Below, piece by piece: positions 5,841 through 46,487 of a stretch of 64,000 nt of DNA. The stretch lies in the NCBI RefSeq assembly GCF_000007005.1, contig NC_002754.1; one strand, written 5' to 3'. Position 1 is the stretch's first letter. Each line of letters begins with the position of its first letter. Made by a program: the position numbers and the translations under genes. The notes beneath the pieces were generated by a model. It searched no databases. It was not told the DNA's origin and saw nothing but the letters and a program-made list of their open reading frames with translations. Source of the DNA: Saccharolobus solfataricus P2 (lineage in GTDB: Archaea; Thermoproteota; Thermoprotei_A; Sulfolobales; Sulfolobaceae).

Positions 5841-5910
5841 ATGGTGTGCAAAGTATGATCTTGTGAGATATAGTTCAGCAAAATTTTTAATGTAATCCTT
5901 TTTATAGTAA

Positions 5911-5967
5911 GTGAGGATGACGAATCCGGGAACTGATCAGTGAGGACATGCGCGAACGCTGATTCAT
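5911..5967 (+). ncRNA. C/D-box methylation guide sRNA
   Basis: C box AGGATGA 5914-5920, 12-nt guide, D' box CTGA 5933-5936, C' box GTGAGGA 5940-5946, 12-nt guide, D box CTGA 5959-5962, terminal stem GTGAG/TTCAT. Confidence 0.85.
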
Positions 5968-19018: not shown

Positions 19019-19188
19019 ATTATTTCCAATTTAATAAACATTTTCCAATACTAGCCTAAAAGTCTCATAGCGTAGAGGACTATTTTGAAAGTTCTTTCCT
19101 TCGAATTCTTCAGCTCTAGACTCCAACTCTTTTACGTAACCACTGGTTATTTTTAATTACTTCTAAATATCGTTTTGATTAAATAATG

Positions 19189-19196
19189 TTTATATA
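19189..19196 (+). promoter_or_regulatory. TATA box of element copy 1
   Basis: TTTATATA within ATGTTTATATA, conserved at the equivalent position in copy 2 (46189-46196) and ~25-30 nt before the structured region. Confidence 0.7.
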
Positions 19197-19221
19197 GTAT
19201 TACAATGTATTTTCTATTGGT

Positions 19222-19418
19222 GATCTCCCAACTGATGACGGGCACTGCTCACGAGGTTTGGGGAGTGATAAAAGTGTGGATGGGAGGGTAGTGGTGTTTC
19301 CCTCGACCAGCCCCAATGATTTAAGGGTGACTGCGTATGATCCCTTAGGAGGGGTGCCCCATGGCGGAATTAGAAGTAATTAAAAGTAAGGAAAAGTTAC
19401 GCCACGAGTAAACACTCT
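19222..19418 (+). ncRNA. structured multi-K-turn RNA, copy 1 (omegaRNA-like candidate)
   Basis: K-turn-like motif 19224-19265, GAGGG/CCCTC stem, K-turn plus K-loop hairpin 19311-19354, 3' hairpin, and GGTGTTT/AAACACT long-range pairing. Compensatory changes are seen against copy 2. Confidence 0.75.
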
Positions 19419-19713
19419 TATATAGTAAAGAGGACCAATATACATTTCAAACAATTATAGGTATTATTTGTTTTTACGTAGCCTAAAACTACCCAACCCT
19501 CATGGAAAACATTATCAAAATCCAACCCTCATAAAGTTAAAAAGTTAAGGCCTTTGAATAATTCTTTCCAGATAAAATTTAGTAAATAGTAACTTATATT
19601 TAAGAACTTATTTAACAAGATTAAATAGGTACAAGAAAAGCTAATATCTTAATAAAATGTGTTAAAGTACATTATGGAAAAGTTTTAAAAAGAGAGAGTA
19701 CGGACATTATCTT

Positions 19714-33558: not shown

Positions 33559-34731
33559 AACTATTGCCCCACCTTGACCTCCACCAACACACAGCGTTGC
33601 AACACCGTAATCCTTTCCTTCTATTATTAATTGCCTAGCCAAGGTACCCACTAGTCTAGCCCCAGTGGCTCCTAGTGGATGCCCTATAGCAATAGCACCT
33701 CCCTTCTTATTTACTGTGCTCTCATCCAATTCTAATTGTTTTATAGCATATAATACTACAACTGCAAATGCCTCATTTATTTCCCATAAGTCTATTTTTC
33801 TTGTACTTAAATTTGCCTTTTCTAAGGCCTTCTTGGAAGCCGGTACTGGTCCCTTCCCCATTACTGCTGGAGGTACTCCAGCAAACCCAAAACTCCTTAT
33901 TTTTGCCATTGGAGTTAATCCATATTTCTTCAATGCATTTTTTGACATTAGAAGTACATAAGAAGCTCCAGAATTCAAAGGTGCTGAATTTCCTGCAGTT
34001 ATTGTACCATTAGGTTTAAAGGCTGGAGGCAATTGGCCTAATTTTTCTATGCTAGTGTCTGGTCTAACCGATTGATCTACATTCACTACAGTTTTCTTCC
34101 CTTCAACTTCTACCTCAATAGGTAGGATCTCGTCTTTGAAATACCCCTCTTGTATAGCTTTCCATGCTAATTGATGACTCCTTAAAGACCACCTATCCAT
34201 TTCCTCCCTTTTTATTCTAGCTTCTTCAGCTAATTTCTCAGCAGTTAATCCCATAACATATCCTGTAGTTAAATCGTATTCAATATATTTACTATCAGTT
34301 AGAAACTTAGTGTTAACTTCAATATGTGGATTATCAAACATTGGCGTTCTAGATAATTTTTCAACTCCACCCGCTAATACTATATCAGCCATACCAGTTG
34401 ATATTTCCATGGCTCCTATAGAAACTGTAGTTAATGATGAAGCGCATTGCCTATCCACAGCCATAGTTGGTATGTTATATGGTAATCTCGCTGCGAAAAT
34501 TTCATGCCTACCTCCGAAAGCCCATTGTTCGCCTACTTGGAGCGCACATCCAGTGATTATTTCGTCTATTTCTTCTGCCTTAATTCCGTTTTTCTCTATT
34601 AACCTATTTATTACCATTCCAGCTAATTCCTCTGGTCTTATATTGTAAAATGGATCTTTTTGATAGTCCTTGCGTGAAAACCTCGTAAATGCCGTTCTCG
34701 CATAATCTACCAGATATACATCCTCTAACAT
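33544..34731 (-). CDS. acetyl-CoA C-acyltransferase (thiolase)
   Basis: The full thiolase catalytic set: RQCASS, NEAFA, GHPLGATG and LCVGGG. Confidence 0.95.
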   Translation of the reverse strand: MLEDVYLVDYARTAFTRFSRKDYQKDPFYNIRPEELAGMVINRLIEKNGIKAEEIDEIITGCALQVGEQWAFGGRHEIFAARLPYNIPTMAVDRQCASSLTTVSIGAMEISTGMADIVLAGGVEKLSRTPMFDNPHIEVNTKFLTDSKYIEYDLTTGYVMGLTAEKLAEEARIKREEMDRWSLRSHQLAWKAIQEGYFKDEILPIEVEVEGKKTVVNVDQSVRPDTSIEKLGQLPPAFKPNGTITAGNSAPLNSGASYVLLMSKNALKKYGLTPMAKIRSFGFAGVPPAVMGKGPVPASKKALEKANLSTRKIDLWEINEAFAVVVLYAIKQLELDESTVNKKGGAIAIGHPLGATGARLVGTLARQLIIEGKDYGVATLCVGGGQGGAIVLERV

Positions 34732-44631: not shown

Positions 44632-45774
44632 ATGATTGTAGGATTTGCCGGAAAACTATATAAAAACTATGAGAAAGATGGTATAGAGTTATTGAAAGAG
44701 GTCACTGATGAGGCACTAGATATTGCTGGATTGAATTACGCTGACGTCGATGGGATAATGGCTAACATCGGAAGAGGCTCATTTCACGGTAATAGGACAT
44801 ATCTTAATCCTCCTGCCCAAATAAGTGAATATTTTGGAATAAAGCCGAAAATTATAGAACATGTCCAATACGGAGGACCTTCAGTATTGTCAATGATATA
44901 TAGGGCTTACAAGGCAATCAAGGCGGGGGATGCGGAGACAATACTTTGCATACAAGGAGGGAAAATATCTCATTTAAGAGACAATCATTTCCAAAAAACA
45001 GATATAATTGATAGTCCCTTTGATGAGTACATTAAGATTTATGACCAGATGTCTCCAATATCTGATTACGCAATGGTTGCTTATAGACATTCTAAACTCT
45101 TCGGTACAACTGACGAACAAAGGGCACGTATTGCAGTGATCCAGAGATATAATGCAAGTTATAATCCTAAAGCTCTGTTCAGAAATCCTATTACAGTCGA
45201 AGATGTTTTGAAATCTAGGATAGTTTCTTATCCTTTACATCTTCTTGAAATAGTTTACCCTATAGACGGTTTTCACGTTTTTGTGGTAAGTAAAAGGAGT
45301 AGTAAGTCAGCCCTTAGAAATATTGACATTTTAGCGTATGGAGAGGCCCATTGGCCAAATCCACCAGCTGAATGGGATGATATAATTTATACTCCAACAA
45401 CTGAAAGCGCAAAAAGGGCTTCATTTGACCTAAACCGGGTAGATGCCTTTCAACTCTACGACTCATTCACCATAACTGTGATGCTACAAATGGAGGACAT
45501 AGGGTTAGTTGAGAAAGGTAAGGTTGGACAGTTCGTAGAATCTCATGATTTATCATTTAAGGGCGATGTTCCAATTAATACTGGGGGAGGTAGTTTAAAT
45601 ACTGGTCAGCCCGCATACATGAGTGGTGGTGTTATTTTAGAGGAGGCATTACTTCAATTAAACGATATGGCTAATGGTCATCAAGTTAAAGGTGCAAATG
45701 TTATATTTTTAAATGGAATTGGGTGGTGGAGTAGAAGGCACAGTGTAACTTTAGTATTGGGTGAGCGAAAATGA
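44632..45774 (+). CDS. thiolase-fold protein lacking the catalytic Cys/His (Ltp2-like aldolase candidate)
   Basis: QYGGPS in place of xCAS, NTGGGSLNTGQPAY in place of GHP, and LYDSFT. Confidence 0.85.
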   Translation: MIVGFAGKLYKNYEKDGIELLKEVTDEALDIAGLNYADVDGIMANIGRGSFHGNRTYLNPPAQISEYFGIKPKIIEHVQYGGPSVLSMIYRAYKAIKAGDAETILCIQGGKISHLRDNHFQKTDIIDSPFDEYIKIYDQMSPISDYAMVAYRHSKLFGTTDEQRARIAVIQRYNASYNPKALFRNPITVEDVLKSRIVSYPLHLLEIVYPIDGFHVFVVSKRSSKSALRNIDILAYGEAHWPNPPAEWDDIIYTPTTESAKRASFDLNRVDAFQLYDSFTITVMLQMEDIGLVEKGKVGQFVESHDLSFKGDVPINTGGGSLNTGQPAYMSGGVILEEALLQLNDMANGHQVKGANVIFLNGIGWWSRRHSVTLVLGERK

Positions 45775-46145
45775 GGGAAGAAGAAATAAGAGAATTATAT
45801 TTTAAGTATTTCGATGAGAATAAGTTACCGTTTATTCAGTGCAATAAATGTGGCCATAAGTTTTACTATCCAAGAGTACTTTGTCCTAAATGTGGTTCTT
45901 CAGATATTGAAGTTAGGTTTAGTAAAGGTTTAGGTAAAATATTTGCAATGACTAAAGTTTATAGAAAGGATGGTAGTTACGTTATTTATGGGATAGTTGA
46001 GCTTGAGGAAGGGTTTAGAATGTATTCCAATATAATTGAGGAAAGTCAAGCTGATATTAATAGGAAAGTTGAAGTAATATTTAAGGAGATTAACGGCAAG
46101 AAATATCCCCTGTTTAAGACTGTAACACATTTGCATAACTTTTAA
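45771..46145 (+). CDS. DUF35 Zn-ribbon/OB-fold protein
   Basis: CNKCG...YPR..CPKCGS and VELEEGFRMYSNI; overlaps the upstream thiolase-fold gene by 4 bp. Confidence 0.9.
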   Translation: MREEEIRELYFKYFDENKLPFIQCNKCGHKFYYPRVLCPKCGSSDIEVRFSKGLGKIFAMTKVYRKDGSYVIYGIVELEEGFRMYSNIIEESQADINRKVEVIFKEINGKKYPLFKTVTHLHNF

Positions 46146-46416
46146 ATACTTTTAATCATTTCACAATATGATCTTTATTATGATTATGTTTATATATTAT
46201 TTCCTCTACATTATAAATTGATGAACTCCATACTGATGACGGGCTATGCTCACGAGGTATTGGGGGCGACAAATACGGATGGGAGGGTAGTGGTGTTTCC
46301 CTCGACTAGCCCCAATGAGTTGAGGGTGAGTGTGTATGAGCCCTCAAGAGGGGTGCCCGTGGCGGAATTAGAAGTGGTTAAAAGTAAGCAGAAGTTACGC
46401 CACGGGTAAACACTCT
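46117..46416 (+). mobile_element. ~300-bp non-autonomous element, copy 2
   Basis: Same architecture as 19118-19418. The inverted match between 46133-46162 and 46371-46400 is 23/30. TATA at 46189-46196. TTTAA at 46113-46117 lies at the left junction. Confidence 0.75.
46220..46416 (+). ncRNA. structured multi-K-turn RNA, copy 2 (omegaRNA-like candidate)
   Basis: Covarying stems ATACT/GGTAT and TTGAGGG/CCCTCAA, an 11-bp 3' stem TGCCCGTGGCG/CGCCACGGGTA, and GGTGTTT 46292-46298 pairing with AAACACT 46408-46414. Confidence 0.75.
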
Positions 46417-46487
46417 CTAAACCTGAGTTTCATTTTTTATCCATAGAGGTAAAAAAGCTTAAATATAGAAAAGATTACATCTTACAT

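What the first reader, a model, noticed from the sequence alone, without database searches (positions are those of the whole stretch)
19118..19440. Stand-alone promoter plus structured RNA inside a 300-bp element with no transposase: candidate orphan omegaRNA (guide) cassette, copy 1
Seen in the sequence: a 301-bp unit recurs at 46117-46416 with unrelated flanks. After a conserved TATA (19189-19196) comes a ~195-nt foldable region: (i) a K-turn-like motif AACT-GAT-GA...GA-GGTT, (ii) a GAGGG/CCCTC stem whose loop GGTGTTT (19293-19299) pairs with AAACACT (19410-19416) at the very end of the unit, giving a pseudoknot, (iii) a CCCC-AAT-GA...GA-GGGG K-turn topped by a GGG-UGA...UGAU-CCC K-loop, and (iv) a 3' hairpin. 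Differences between copies include compensatory changes (AACT/GGTT to TACT/GGTA; TTAAGGG/CCCTTAG to TTGAGGG/CCCTCAA). Established knowledge: IS200/IS605 and IS607 TnpB nucleases use a right-end omegaRNA scaffold that ends at the element boundary and takes its guide from flanking DNA; K-turns bind L7Ae. Inference: this is an internally deleted element whose left-end promoter now drives the scaffold directly, with guide TATATAGTAAAGAGG..., to be loaded by a TnpB or inactive TnpB encoded elsewhere. That would be a trans-acting multi-guide system. It may relate to reported Sulfolobus transposon-derived RNAs (RNA-257 family) or the SMN1 element, which I cannot verify.
Basis: partly seen in the sequence, partly recalled or inferred. 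Interest (0 to 1): 0.88.

Follow-up and report, generated by a model that had tools for sequence, protein, structure and literature searches.

The report
Gene-less transposon carrying a guide-RNA scaffold
The two 300-bp repeats are gene-less copies of an archaeal IS607-type jumping gene that keep its ends, have their own promoter and retain the folded guide-RNA scaffold normally buried in the 3' end of its tnpB gene; this is a new example of a known kind of element rather than a new system.

Summary
Window 19118-19415 and 46117-46413 are two diverged copies (79% identical) of a ~298-bp element with unrelated flanks.

A 21-mer from the element hits 35 loci in Metallosphaera, Acidianus, other Sulfolobaceae, Caldisphaera and Acidilobus:
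- 24 are the same short unit.
- 11 carry the same 3' end, where sequence allows as the last ~290 nt of a 441-aa TnpB-like gene. The complete copies are ~1.95-kb elements that also encode a serine-recombinase TnpA.

The window copies are therefore IS607-family MITEs. They keep the left end, carry a conserved TATA box, and retain two RNA modules of the tnpB 3' end.

The right end is 19415, not 19418.

AGAC on the left and ...ACAC on the right mirror the TGGG/UCGG rule published for an IS607 TnpB.

The RNA most likely acts as an omegaRNA loaded in trans. Transcription, guide use and TnpB loading are untested. No tnpB lies in the window, and the cognate TnpB clade lacks the RuvC-II glutamate and the zinc finger.

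The closest precedents are ISC1904-derived RNA-257, SMN1 and PATEs.

The parts
19118..19415 (+). MITE copy 1, whole element (298 bp) including the AGAC at its left junction
   Evidence: Boundaries come from the alignment of 37 copies with unrelated flanks. It is 92% identical to a Metallosphaera yellowstonensis copy, L010.
19118..19121 (+). AGAC: inferred target / TAM-like motif; its AC (19120-19121) is the inferred serine-recombinase crossover dinucleotide
   Evidence: AGAC is present at 25 of the 27 left junctions listed and at both complete full-length ones (AGAT and AGAA in the other two short copies), while the bases 5' of it vary. The right end also ends in AC. A sister family has xGGG on the left and ACGG on the right. 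This parallels TGGG/UCGG in CboIStron. Inference.
19122..19188 (+). Left-end sequence, homologous to the left end of the full-length IS for the first ~45 nt, then a MITE-specific spacer
   Evidence: Left-end BLAST and alignment with L033 4859-4920.
19189..19196 (+). TATA box TTTATATA. The expected transcription start is about 19219-19222 (not mapped)
   Evidence: Conserved in nearly all short copies and absent from the full-length left end. The start position is inferred from the usual archaeal TATA-to-start spacing.
19225..19265 (+). Stem 1 with a K-turn-like motif (CUCCC..AACU-GAU-GA-C GGGC ACU GCUC AC-GA-GGUU..GGGAG)
   Evidence: RNAalifold pairs. The GA/GA motif is kept while the stems covary in five of six lineages.
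19284..19304 (+). Hairpin GAGGG/CCCTC whose loop GGUGUUU (19293-19299) pairs with the 3' tail to form a pseudoknot
   Evidence: Helix 1 and helix 2. Two pseudoknot pairs covary across three subfamilies.
19310..19355 (+). Two-tier hairpin: outer GCCCC/GGGGU, an asymmetric purine-rich internal loop, inner UUAAGGG/CCCUUAG, and a K-loop GGG-UGA...UGAU-CCC
   Evidence: Helices 3 and 4. Independent folds at 70 C give the same shape. UGA...UGA(U/A) is conserved in five lineages.
19357..19408 (+). Terminal long hairpin (CCCCAUGGCG / CGCCACGAG). It is weakened in this copy by one insertion and two substitutions
   Evidence: Helix 5 (99% paired; 9 of 10 pairs change on both sides). The copy-1 defects are seen.
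19410..19415 (+). AAACAC tail: pseudoknot partner and right end of the element (core AC at 19414-19415)
   Evidence: All 37 copies end here, then diverge. Pseudoknot covariation.
19416..19435 (+). Predicted flank-derived guide, TCTTATATAGTAAAGAGGAC (inferred, not shown)
   Evidence: By analogy with TnpB omegaRNAs. The only other match in the window, at 34636 with 3 mismatches, is not preceded by AGAC.
46117..46413 (+). MITE copy 2, whole element (297 bp). AGAC at 46117-46120. It supplies the last codons (..TVTHLHNF) and the stop codon of ORF 45771-46145
46189..46196 (+). TATA box TTTATATA. The expected start is about 46220-46221
   Evidence: The published T7 primer for the 'Sso 3148 3'UTR' RNA starts at 46221.
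46226..46266 (+). Stem 1 with K-turn-like motif (UACU-GAU-GA...GA-GGUA)
46277..46413 (+). 3' RNA domain: pseudoknot hairpin 46283-46303, two-tier K-loop hairpin 46309-46354, terminal hairpin 46356-46406, tail AAACAC 46408-46413
   Evidence: Covariance-model hit of 130 bits. The fold at 70 C gives all three hairpins.
46414..46438 (+). Predicted guide TCTCTAAACCTGAGTTTCAT, running into a T6 run (46433-46438) that could end transcription about 20-25 nt past the scaffold
   Evidence: Sequence. The only match in the window is itself. Inference.

Best explanation
Each unit is a non-autonomous derivative (MITE) of an IS607-family insertion sequence of Sulfolobales, about 1.95 kb long and encoding a serine-recombinase TnpA plus a 441-aa TnpB-like protein.

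The unit keeps the left end, which sits next to an AGAC motif whose AC matches the AC that closes the right end. It carries a strong archaeal TATA promoter that the full-length left end lacks. It keeps two RNA modules that in the parent lie inside the 3' end of tnpB: a K-turn stem, and a 138-nt domain made of a pseudoknot hairpin, a K-loop hairpin and a terminal hairpin. That domain ends exactly at the transposon's right end.

Shown: the homology, the element boundaries, the multicopy and cross-genus spread, and the conserved, covarying, sense-strand RNA structure.

Inferred:
- The promoter makes a ~195-nt scaffold that reads ~20 nt into the flank.
- That RNA is loaded in trans by the family's TnpB, encoded by full-length copies elsewhere in the genome.
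- The complex recognises the AGAC-flanked empty site left if the MITE is excised, so the MITE is retained or re-copied. This is the omegaRNA/TnpB homing logic shown for IS605 and for an IS607 IStron.
For: Multicopy element, spread across genera:
- 35 loci in five taxa carry the 21-mer. Their alignment splits them into 24 short copies and 11 with the tnpB-type upstream sequence, all ending at GTAAACAC (GTAAAAAC in one) before flanks diverge.

Parent element:
- The long class carries the region as the 3' end of a 441-aa ORF with the stop codon in GGGTAAACAC.
- A MerR-HTH/resolvase-type tnpA lies upstream, the element is about 1948 bp, and its left end is homologous to the MITE left end.
- The ORF is TnpB superfamily: TIGR01766 at 61.8 bits, above its cutoff. 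Sources name relatives 'IS607 transposase protein TnpB'. A family profile that also includes canonical TnpBs hits TnpB and Cas12f structures at E = 4e-30.

RNA structure:
- Model R1 finds 51 strong matches.
- On that alignment 91.2% of cells are paired against 80.3% in shuffles (0 of 500 reach it), and against 47-59% when partners are slid. 24 of 33 pairs change on both sides.
- The pseudoknot covaries: GGUGUUU/AAACAC, GGCGUU/AACGC, GCCGUU/AACGG.
- Relatives whose TnpB is only 38-41% identical keep every helix with different sequence.
- G-U pairs occur on the sense strand only.

No coding constraint in the short copies:
- Indels of 5, 10 and 15 nt sit in the terminal hairpin loop, and copy 1 is frameshifted.
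- The RNA part is better conserved than the left end and promoter part, 85% against 66%.

Boundary rule and precedents:
- The junction pattern matches the published IS607 TnpB system, where the TAM is TGGG and the scaffold ends UCGG.
- PATEs with omegaRNAs that need TnpB in trans are described.
- ISC1904-derived RNA-257 RNAs with their own promoters are transcribed in S. solfataricus.
Against: - There is no direct evidence here of a transcript, of its 3' end or of TnpB binding.
- No TnpB-like ORF lies in the 64-kb window, and I could not check the rest of the genome.
- Every member of the cognate TnpB clade has Gly in place of the RuvC-II glutamate and lacks the zinc-finger cysteines. A possible relocated Glu is present in only 7 of 10 members, so nuclease activity is uncertain.
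- No empty site was found, so it is not shown whether AGAC is target or element.
- Copy 1's terminal hairpin is damaged.
- Covariation was counted on a model-fitted alignment, which favours the model's structure, and part of the conservation may come from the overlapping ORF in the full-length parents.
Confidence: 0.6

Rival explanations
1. The RNA has been taken over by the host as a trans-acting antisense or regulatory small RNA, as proposed for RNA-257(1-4). It would pair with mRNAs that carry sequence from the same IS family at their 3' ends and would act independently of TnpB.
For: RNA-257 paralogues are likewise a promoter plus a core homologous to the distal orfB of an IS607-family element. 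They are transcribed and lower the level of a target mRNA. Copy 2 overlaps the 3' end of ORF 45771-46145 and provides its last codons, so IS-derived sequence does sit in mRNA ends.
Against: Antisense action does not explain conservation of four helices, a pseudoknot and K-turn motifs across lineages whose primary sequence has diverged. It also does not explain why the RNA ends exactly at the transposon boundary. The RNA is sense to the parent tnpB. No complementary target was found in the window.
Confidence: 0.15
2. The unit is an inert MITE. The structure is inherited from the parent tnpB/omegaRNA region, it persists only because the copies are young or because the sequence is needed in cis for TnpA, and the TATA box is incidental.
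For: Mean identity among the short copies is 92%, so much of the within-family conservation could be recent ancestry. Several copies carry damaging deletions in the two-tier hairpin (L017, L023, L028, L032). Copy 1 has a weakened terminal hairpin.
Against: The two window copies differ by 21% yet keep compensatory pairs. A second, diverged short family (~260 bp) has the same promoter, stem 1 and 3' domain layout with the same internal piece missing. Serine recombinases act on the terminal tens of base pairs of duplex DNA and do not need 200 bp of foldable sequence. The TATA box is kept in nearly all short copies.
Confidence: 0.15
3. The RNA guides a nuclease-inactive TnpB derivative, so the dispersed MITEs act as guide genes for RNA-guided DNA binding or repression (as in TldR) rather than for cleavage and homing.
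For: All clade members have RuvC-II E replaced by G and have lost the zinc finger. Inactivated TnpBs with regulatory roles are documented.
Against: The protein stays inside a mobile, multicopy IS next to tnpA. That is the signature of clades called 'rearranged but active', several of them archaeal and associated with serine recombinases. RuvC-I D and RuvC-III D are kept, and a conserved Glu lies about 10 residues downstream in most members.
Confidence: 0.08
4. The foldable region is a DNA-level or unrelated RNP element, such as a C/D or H/ACA-type L7Ae small RNA, and has nothing to do with TnpB.
For: There are UGAUGA-like and K-turn or K-loop motifs, and an ACA near the 3' end.
Against: No Rfam family matches, even at E up to 10. 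The RNA is the 3' end of tnpB in the parent element. G-U pairs and the pseudoknot argue for a sense RNA of omegaRNA type.
Confidence: 0.02

Closest known systems
PATE / minimal non-autonomous IS200/IS605 elements that encode omegaRNAs (Meers et al. 2023, PMC10055086)
   Same: Both are gene-less derivatives that keep both transposon ends and the omegaRNA scaffold. Both would need TnpA and TnpB supplied in trans.
   Different: Here the parent is IS607-type (serine recombinase, duplex-DNA ends) and archaeal, with no palindromic single-stranded-DNA ends. The element carries its own TATA promoter, and an internal ~85-nt piece of the RNA region is also deleted.
IS607-family TnpB/omegaRNA of the C. 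botulinum IStron (Zedaveinyte et al. 2023, PMC10690162)
   Same: Both pair a serine TnpA with TnpB, and the omegaRNA ends at the right end. The target/TAM (TGGG there, AGAC here) shares its last two bases with the end of the scaffold (UCGG there, ACAC here) and differs at position -3.
   Different: The lineage is archaeal and there is no group I intron. The TnpB clade has RuvC-II E replaced by G and no zinc finger. The TAM here is inferred from junctions, not measured.
RNA-257(1-4) of S. solfataricus (Maertens et al. 2013, PMC3674436)
   Same: Both are intergenic, have their own consensus-like promoter, and have a core homologous to the distal coding part of the orfB of an IS607-family element (ISC1904). 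They occur as several paralogues in the same organism.
   Different: The sequence family is different: the RNA-257 primers have no match in either copy. RNA-257 was interpreted as an antisense regulator, and no structure or guide role was proposed. Copy 2 appears in that paper only as the 'Sso 3148 3'UTR' negative-control RNA.
SMN1, the 320-321-bp non-inverted-repeat MITE of S. islandicus mobilised by ISC1733 (Berkner and Lipps 2007, as cited in PMC3718332)
   Same: Both are ~300-bp MITEs of Sulfolobales tied to an orfA(resolvase)/orfB-type IS. SMN1's lack of terminal inverted repeats is recalled from the 2007 abstract, which I could not read.
   Different: The size differs (298 against 320 bp) and so does the presumed parent (~1.95 kb against 1.73 kb). 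I could not obtain the SMN1 sequence, so identity is untested.
SisTnpB1 omegaRNA of S. islandicus (Cell Discov 2023, PMC10640517)
   Same: It is an archaeal, thermophilic TnpB whose right-end-derived RNA has hairpins followed by a flank-derived guide.
   Different: It belongs to the IS200/IS605 family, has a TTTAA TAM and a canonical D-E-D RuvC. It is a different protein clade and a different RNA.

Membership tests
IS607-family non-autonomous element (MITE) | Both ends are shared with an autonomous element that encodes a serine-recombinase TnpA | tested here: met
   The right ~200 bp is identical in kind to the right end of ~1.95-kb elements. The left end AGACTGTAAC...ACGTAAC is homologous to their left end. 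tnpA (MerR-HTH plus resolvase) lies upstream of tnpB.
IS607-family non-autonomous element (MITE) | No transposase gene inside the element | tested here: met
   Only ORFs of 63 aa or less lie inside. tblastn and a TnpB profile find no tnpB in the window.
IS607-family non-autonomous element (MITE) | Multiple copies with unrelated flanks, no terminal inverted repeats and no target-site duplication, and the same crossover dinucleotide at both junctions | tested here: met
   26 short copies including the window's. Flanks are unrelated. AG-AC on the left and AC-AC on the right; the sister family has xG-GG and AC-GG.
IS607-family non-autonomous element (MITE) | Mobilised in trans by TnpA | not testable with these tools
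   This needs excision or insertion assays, or comparison of strains. No empty site was found among the loci held.
TnpB omegaRNA | Encoded at, or overlapping, the 3' end of tnpB and ending at the transposon's right end | tested here: met
   This holds in the full-length relatives. In the window only the RNA part remains.
TnpB omegaRNA | Conserved secondary structure, including a pseudoknot that involves the bases just 5' of the guide | tested here: met
   5 helices, 24 of 33 pairs with changes on both sides, and the pseudoknot covaries. The alignment was fitted to the model, so the counts are somewhat favoured.
TnpB omegaRNA | The transcript extends about 16-20 nt into flanking DNA as the guide | not testable with these tools
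   No RNA data are available. A T6 run 20-25 nt past the right end of copy 2 is compatible with this.
TnpB omegaRNA | Binds a TnpB with an intact RuvC D-E-D triad and directs TAM-dependent cleavage | tested here: inconclusive
   RuvC-I D and RuvC-III D are kept. RuvC-II E is replaced by G in all clade members and the zinc finger is lost. A candidate relocated Glu is present in 7 of 10. Published work describes archaeal clades with rearranged catalytic sites, including one named for its serine-recombinase association, and argues that conserved rearrangements imply activity.
RNA-257 family (ISC1904-derived) | Sequence homology to RNA-257 and to the 3' end of ORF SSO1182 | tested here: not met
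   None of the four RNA-257 primers nor the 1183 3'UTR segment matches either copy at 4 or fewer mismatches.
SMN1 | Sequence identity to the 320-321-bp SMN1 element and dependence on ISC1733 | not tested
   The describing paper and the sequence are not held. The size differs.
K-turn / K-loop (L7Ae-binding) motifs | C stem, 3-nt bulge, tandem sheared G.A/A.G, NC stem (or a loop in place of the C stem) | tested here: met
   Met at sequence level for stem 1 (x-GAU-GA...GA-x) and for the K-loop (GGG-UGA...UGAU-CCC). The GA/GA or UGA/UGA bases are kept while the stems covary in five lineages. The lower 'K-turn' has an extra base and becomes GC/UA in L037 and L039. L7Ae binding itself cannot be tested here.
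Curated RNA families (Rfam 15), including C/D and H/ACA small RNAs | Match at the gathering score | tested here: not met
   No hit over the element at the gathering threshold, and only noise at E up to 10.

The most novel reading that the evidence does not exclude
The TnpB clade tied to this element has RuvC-II Glu replaced by Gly and no zinc finger. If it is a binding-only protein, or one that depends on L7Ae, then the promoter-equipped MITE copies scattered through Sulfolobales genomes would be a dispersed set of guide genes. That would amount to a distributed, array-less guide system for RNA-guided DNA binding or regulation in archaea. The older 'transposon-derived antisense RNAs' such as RNA-257 would be other members of it.
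Probability: 0.1. Interest if true: 0.85.

Novelty: new member of a known kind. Interest (0 to 1): 0.45.

Why it matters
This is a clean archaeal example of a transposon reduced to its ends plus a promoter-driven guide-RNA scaffold. It has a sister family built the same way, and copies 92% identical occur in different genera.

It suggests that RNAs catalogued in Sulfolobus a decade ago as transposon-derived non-coding RNAs may be orphan omegaRNAs. This can be tested directly with existing strains and RNA-seq.

It also points to two less explored features of archaeal TnpB systems. One is K-turn and K-loop motifs in the scaffold, which raises the possibility of L7Ae as a partner. The other is a mobile TnpB clade without the canonical RuvC-II glutamate or the zinc finger.

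For annotation, these units explain conserved GC-rich 'intergenic RNAs' and altered gene 3' ends, as at ORF 45771-46145.

Tried and rejected
- Rfam at the gathering and E-value thresholds: no family over the element.
- blastn of the unit against plasmids and phages: nothing relevant. An exact 21-mer scan of viral contigs found nothing.
- tblastn of the TnpB against plasmids and phages: only relatives at 29% identity or less, in Pyrococcus and STSV viruses.
- phmmer of the TnpB against PDB: no hit. The Pfam scan held here gave no family, although sources list PF27234.
- RNAalifold on the short copies alone found almost no covariation, because they are 92% alike, and chose a different middle hairpin. 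This was resolved by bringing in diverged lineages.
- Search for empty paralogous sites among the loci held: none. It therefore remains inferred whether AGAC is target or element.
- The SMN1 paper and the archaeal IS review could not be read. Sequence-string and locus-name searches of the literature found nothing. No paper in the library links RNA-257 to TnpB guide RNAs.
- Second targets for the two predicted guides in the window: only one chance-level hit, without AGAC.
- Rejected: C/D or H/ACA small RNA; a single-stranded-DNA hairpin signal of the IS200/IS605 type, because the transposase is a serine recombinase; and a chance repeat.
Full report
**1. The observation**

The two units exist as described. 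The repeat finder returns three collinear blocks, 19209-19272, 19278-19359 and 19358-19418, matching 46210-46273, 46277-46358 and 46356-46416 at 78-90% identity. A global alignment of 19118-19415 with 46117-46413 gives 79% identity: 66% over the first ~105 nt and 85% over the rest. Sequence outside is unrelated.

The region is a G+C peak, 0.46-0.52 against about 0.32 around it and 0.356 for the window. Both copies are intergenic, apart from the left edge of copy 2. That edge supplies the last codons (..TVTHLHNF) and the stop codon of ORF 45771-46145. The TATA boxes, the GGTGTTT loop, the AAACAC tail and both quoted compensatory differences are at the stated positions.

**2. What it derives from**

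An exact scan of one genome per species with the 21-mer GAGGGTAGTGGTGTTTCCCTC returned 35 loci:
- about 20 in Metallosphaera yellowstonensis MK1
- 6 in a Sulfolobaceae isolate
- 5 in an Acidianus hospitalis MAG
- 5 in Caldisphaera MAGs
- 1 in Acidilobus

Aligned with the window copies, they fall into two classes.

Twenty-four loci are the same ~300-bp unit. It starts at AGACTGTAAC, carries TTTATATAG and ends at ...CGGGTAAACAC, after which every copy diverges. Window copy 1 is 92% identical to a Metallosphaera copy.

The other eleven share the last ~290 nt but are preceded by coding sequence. Where enough sequence is held, the region is the 3' end of a 441-aa ORF whose stop codon is the TAA inside GGGTAAACAC. 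In the complete copies (L033, L020, L003, L015 and, more diverged, L006) the element is about 1948 bp (L033 4859-6806). It starts with AGACTATAGCACTTTCACGTAAC, which is homologous to the short unit's left end. It carries a MerR-HTH/resolvase-type tnpA upstream of the long ORF, interrupted in L033.

The long ORF belongs to the TnpB superfamily:
- TIGR01766 scores 61.8 bits against a cutoff of 32. NF040570 'guided_TnpB' scores 57.6, below its cutoff of 100.
- Sources name relatives 'IS200/IS605 family accessory protein TnpB-related' and 'IS607 transposase protein TnpB'.
- A profile built with more distant relatives, which include canonical TnpBs, hits TnpB and Cas12f structures at E = 4e-30.

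The window units are therefore internally deleted, gene-less derivatives of an IS607-family element. They lack tnpA and most of tnpB. They also lack an ~85-nt stretch between 'stem 1' and the 3' domain, the part that encodes the RuvC-III motif. The ~60 nt that carries the TATA box has no counterpart in the full-length left end. No TnpB-like ORF lies in the window.

**3. The RNA structure**

The short copies alone are too alike (92%) to test a structure. I therefore fetched the genes of the most distant full-length or partial relatives of the protein, at 38-41% identity: L036-L039.

Their 3' ends show the same architecture with different sequence:
- a C-rich/G-rich stem interrupted by x-(3 nt)-GA...GA-x
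- a hairpin GAGGG/CCCUC (or GAGCCC/GGGCUC and others) with a G-G-Y-G-U-U loop
- a two-tier hairpin whose apical loop keeps UGA...UGA(U/A)
- a long terminal hairpin of 10-12 bp that is entirely different in sequence in each lineage
- a tail AAAC(A/G)(C/G/U)

Independent minimum-free-energy folds at 70 C recover these hairpins in most lineages.

A covariance model built from seven sequences finds 51 strong matches in the loci held, and only the two known places in the window. It also revealed a third subfamily: L001 1964-2100, L002 3815-3940, L031 2850-2986 and 2441-2579, and L014 2531-2672.

On the resulting alignment the named structure, including the pseudoknot, gives these figures:
- 91.2% of cells paired, against 80.3% in column shuffles (0 of 500 reach it) and 47-59% when partners are slid by 1-3 columns
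- 24 of 33 pairs with changes on both sides
- the terminal hairpin 99% paired, with 9 of 10 pairs covarying

The pseudoknot covaries cleanly: loop GGUGUUU with tail AAACAC in the focal family, GGCGUU with AACGC in L037-L039, and GCCGUU with AACGG in the third subfamily.

The low figure for helix 4 (69%) is a one-column register artefact for the focal rows. There the real pairing is UUAAGGG/CCCUUAA, supported by the TTGAGGG/CCCTCAA variant in copy 2 and by wobble variants.

Frequent G-U pairs on this strand argue for a sense-strand RNA. In the short copies, indels of 5, 10 and 15 nt cluster in the terminal hairpin loop and copy 1 is frameshifted, so no protein constraint acts there. One caveat is that the alignment was fitted to the model, which favours its structure. 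The hand comparison and the separate folds do not depend on it.

**4. Boundaries and the likely target motif**

AGAC is present at 25 of the 27 left junctions listed, including both complete full-length ones; the other two short copies have AGAT and AGAA. The bases 5' of it vary. The right junction is ...AAACAC, followed by variable sequence with T favoured at +1. The true right end is therefore 19415 / 46413.

For an IS607-family IStron it has been shown that TnpA inserts at TGGG with GG as the crossover dinucleotide. TnpB uses TGGG as its TAM. The omegaRNA scaffold ends in UCGG, so it shares the last two bases with the TAM and differs at position -3, which prevents self-cleavage (PMC10690162).

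The same pattern is seen here: AGAC on the left and ACAC at the end of the scaffold. In the third subfamily the left junction is (T/A/C)(G/A)GG followed by CTGAAT, and the scaffold ends ACGG. The junction dinucleotide thus changes together at both ends, AC/AC against GG/GG. That is what a serine-recombinase crossover site predicts. Reading AGAC as target and TAM is an inference, because I found no empty site.

**5. How it most likely works**

*Shown:* this is a mobile, multicopy, gene-less IS607-type element spread across genera. It retains a conserved, covarying RNA fold that ends at the transposon boundary, and it has a conserved TATA box about 30 nt upstream of the fold.

*Inferred:* transcription starts near 19220 / 46221 and runs through the scaffold into the flank. 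In copy 2 a T6 run 20-25 nt past the boundary could end it. The RNA is bound in trans by the family's TnpB, made by full-length copies elsewhere. The complex recognises AGAC plus the flank sequence, that is, the empty donor site. This favours retention or re-copying of the MITE, as demonstrated for IS605 and for the IS607 IStron.

Within the window the two predicted guides match only their own flanks.

A second short family has the same layout: a TATA box, stem 1 and the 3' domain, with the same internal piece missing. This argues that the layout is maintained for expressing the RNA and is not an accident of a single deletion.

**6. Uncertainties**

Every member of the cognate TnpB clade has Gly where the RuvC-II glutamate should be (VVVGKF, VVVGDV and similar) and has lost the CxxC...CxxC zinc finger. 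RuvC-I D and RuvC-III RD are kept. A Glu about 10 residues downstream is present in 7 of 10 members.

Published work describes clades with rearranged catalytic sites, several found almost only in archaea and one named for its serine-recombinase association, and argues that conserved rearrangements imply activity. It also notes that the zinc finger has been lost in some large branches (PMC10691335). I cannot tell whether this clade cleaves DNA or only binds it.

Whether the K-turn and K-loop motifs recruit L7Ae cannot be tested here.

**7. Comparison with what is known**

RNA-257(1-4) of S. solfataricus are intergenic, promoter-equipped, transcribed RNAs whose core is homologous to the distal orfB of ISC1904, an IS607-family element (PMC3674436). 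The present units are built the same way but belong to a different sequence family: no RNA-257 primer matches them.

The T7 primer that paper lists for its negative-control RNA, the 'Sso 3148 3'UTR', matches window 46221-46242 exactly. The match begins where a start site is expected for the copy-2 TATA box. Together with 35.6% G+C, this indicates the window is S. solfataricus P2 or a close relative.

SMN1 is a 320-bp MITE of S. islandicus said to depend on ISC1733 (PMC3718332). It is probably a sibling, but I could not obtain its sequence.

Meers et al. already point out that PATEs often encode omegaRNAs that must be used in trans. Within the searchable library no paper connects RNA-257 with TnpB guide RNAs.

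**8. Verdict**

The functional steps remain inferred. I file the element as a new member of a known kind, an omegaRNA-bearing non-autonomous IS element. Its notable points are the dedicated promoter, the K-turn-rich scaffold and the unusual TnpB clade. Interest is moderate.

Noticed in passing
window 5910-5964 (+): Rfam match to the C/D box small RNA sR33 (44.1 bits against a gathering score of 37). It is the only curated RNA family found in the window.
   Followed up: no
L001 1964-2100(-), L002 3815-3940(+), L031 2850-2986(+) and 2441-2579(-), L014 2531-2672(-): A second, diverged short family (~260 bp) has the same layout: a TATA box (CTTTTTATATC), a stem 1 and the 3' domain. Its left junction is xGGG-CTGAAT and its scaffold ends AAACGG. 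Two copies lie head to head in L031.
   Followed up: partly
L003 2959-4180 and L012 5759-6978: A full-length copy (L003) and a short copy (L012) in M. yellowstonensis have the same right flank for 1.2 kb at 98.3% identity. Either a repeated target was hit twice at the same position, or one form replaced the other there.
   Followed up: partly
window 45771-46145 (+) with 46117-46145: The 124-aa ORF upstream of copy 2 takes its last eight or nine codons (..TVTHLHNF) and its stop codon from the element's left end. The insertion has therefore rewritten the gene's C terminus, as reported for SSO1183 and ISC1904.
   Followed up: partly
L033 5477-6802 and relatives (alignments A3, A7): The TnpB clade of this IS has Gly in place of the RuvC-II glutamate and no zinc-finger cysteines, yet it is mobile, multicopy and 75-100% conserved across Sulfolobales, Acidilobales and Vulcanisaeta. 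Only 211 representatives among 1.84 billion proteins reach E <= 1e-3.
   Followed up: partly
window 46221-46242: This is an exact match to the primer for the 'Sso 3148 3'UTR' control RNA in Maertens et al. 2013. The reverse primer printed there is same-sense and overlaps the forward one, so the 3' end of the RNA they made cannot be recovered from the text.
   Followed up: yes
terminal hairpin loop, window 19367-19399 and 46365-46397; also L036, L038, L039: A short motif UAGAAGUA recurs in the otherwise variable loop of the terminal hairpin across diverged lineages (twice as AGAAGU in L036). It may be a protein contact.
   Followed up: no
L002 3360, L027 2116, L034 1790 and others: There are near matches (3-4 mismatches) to the RNA-257 reverse primer (TGAAGCCCAAACCC...) in several fetched loci. 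These may be right ends of ISC1904-like elements in those genomes.
   Followed up: no
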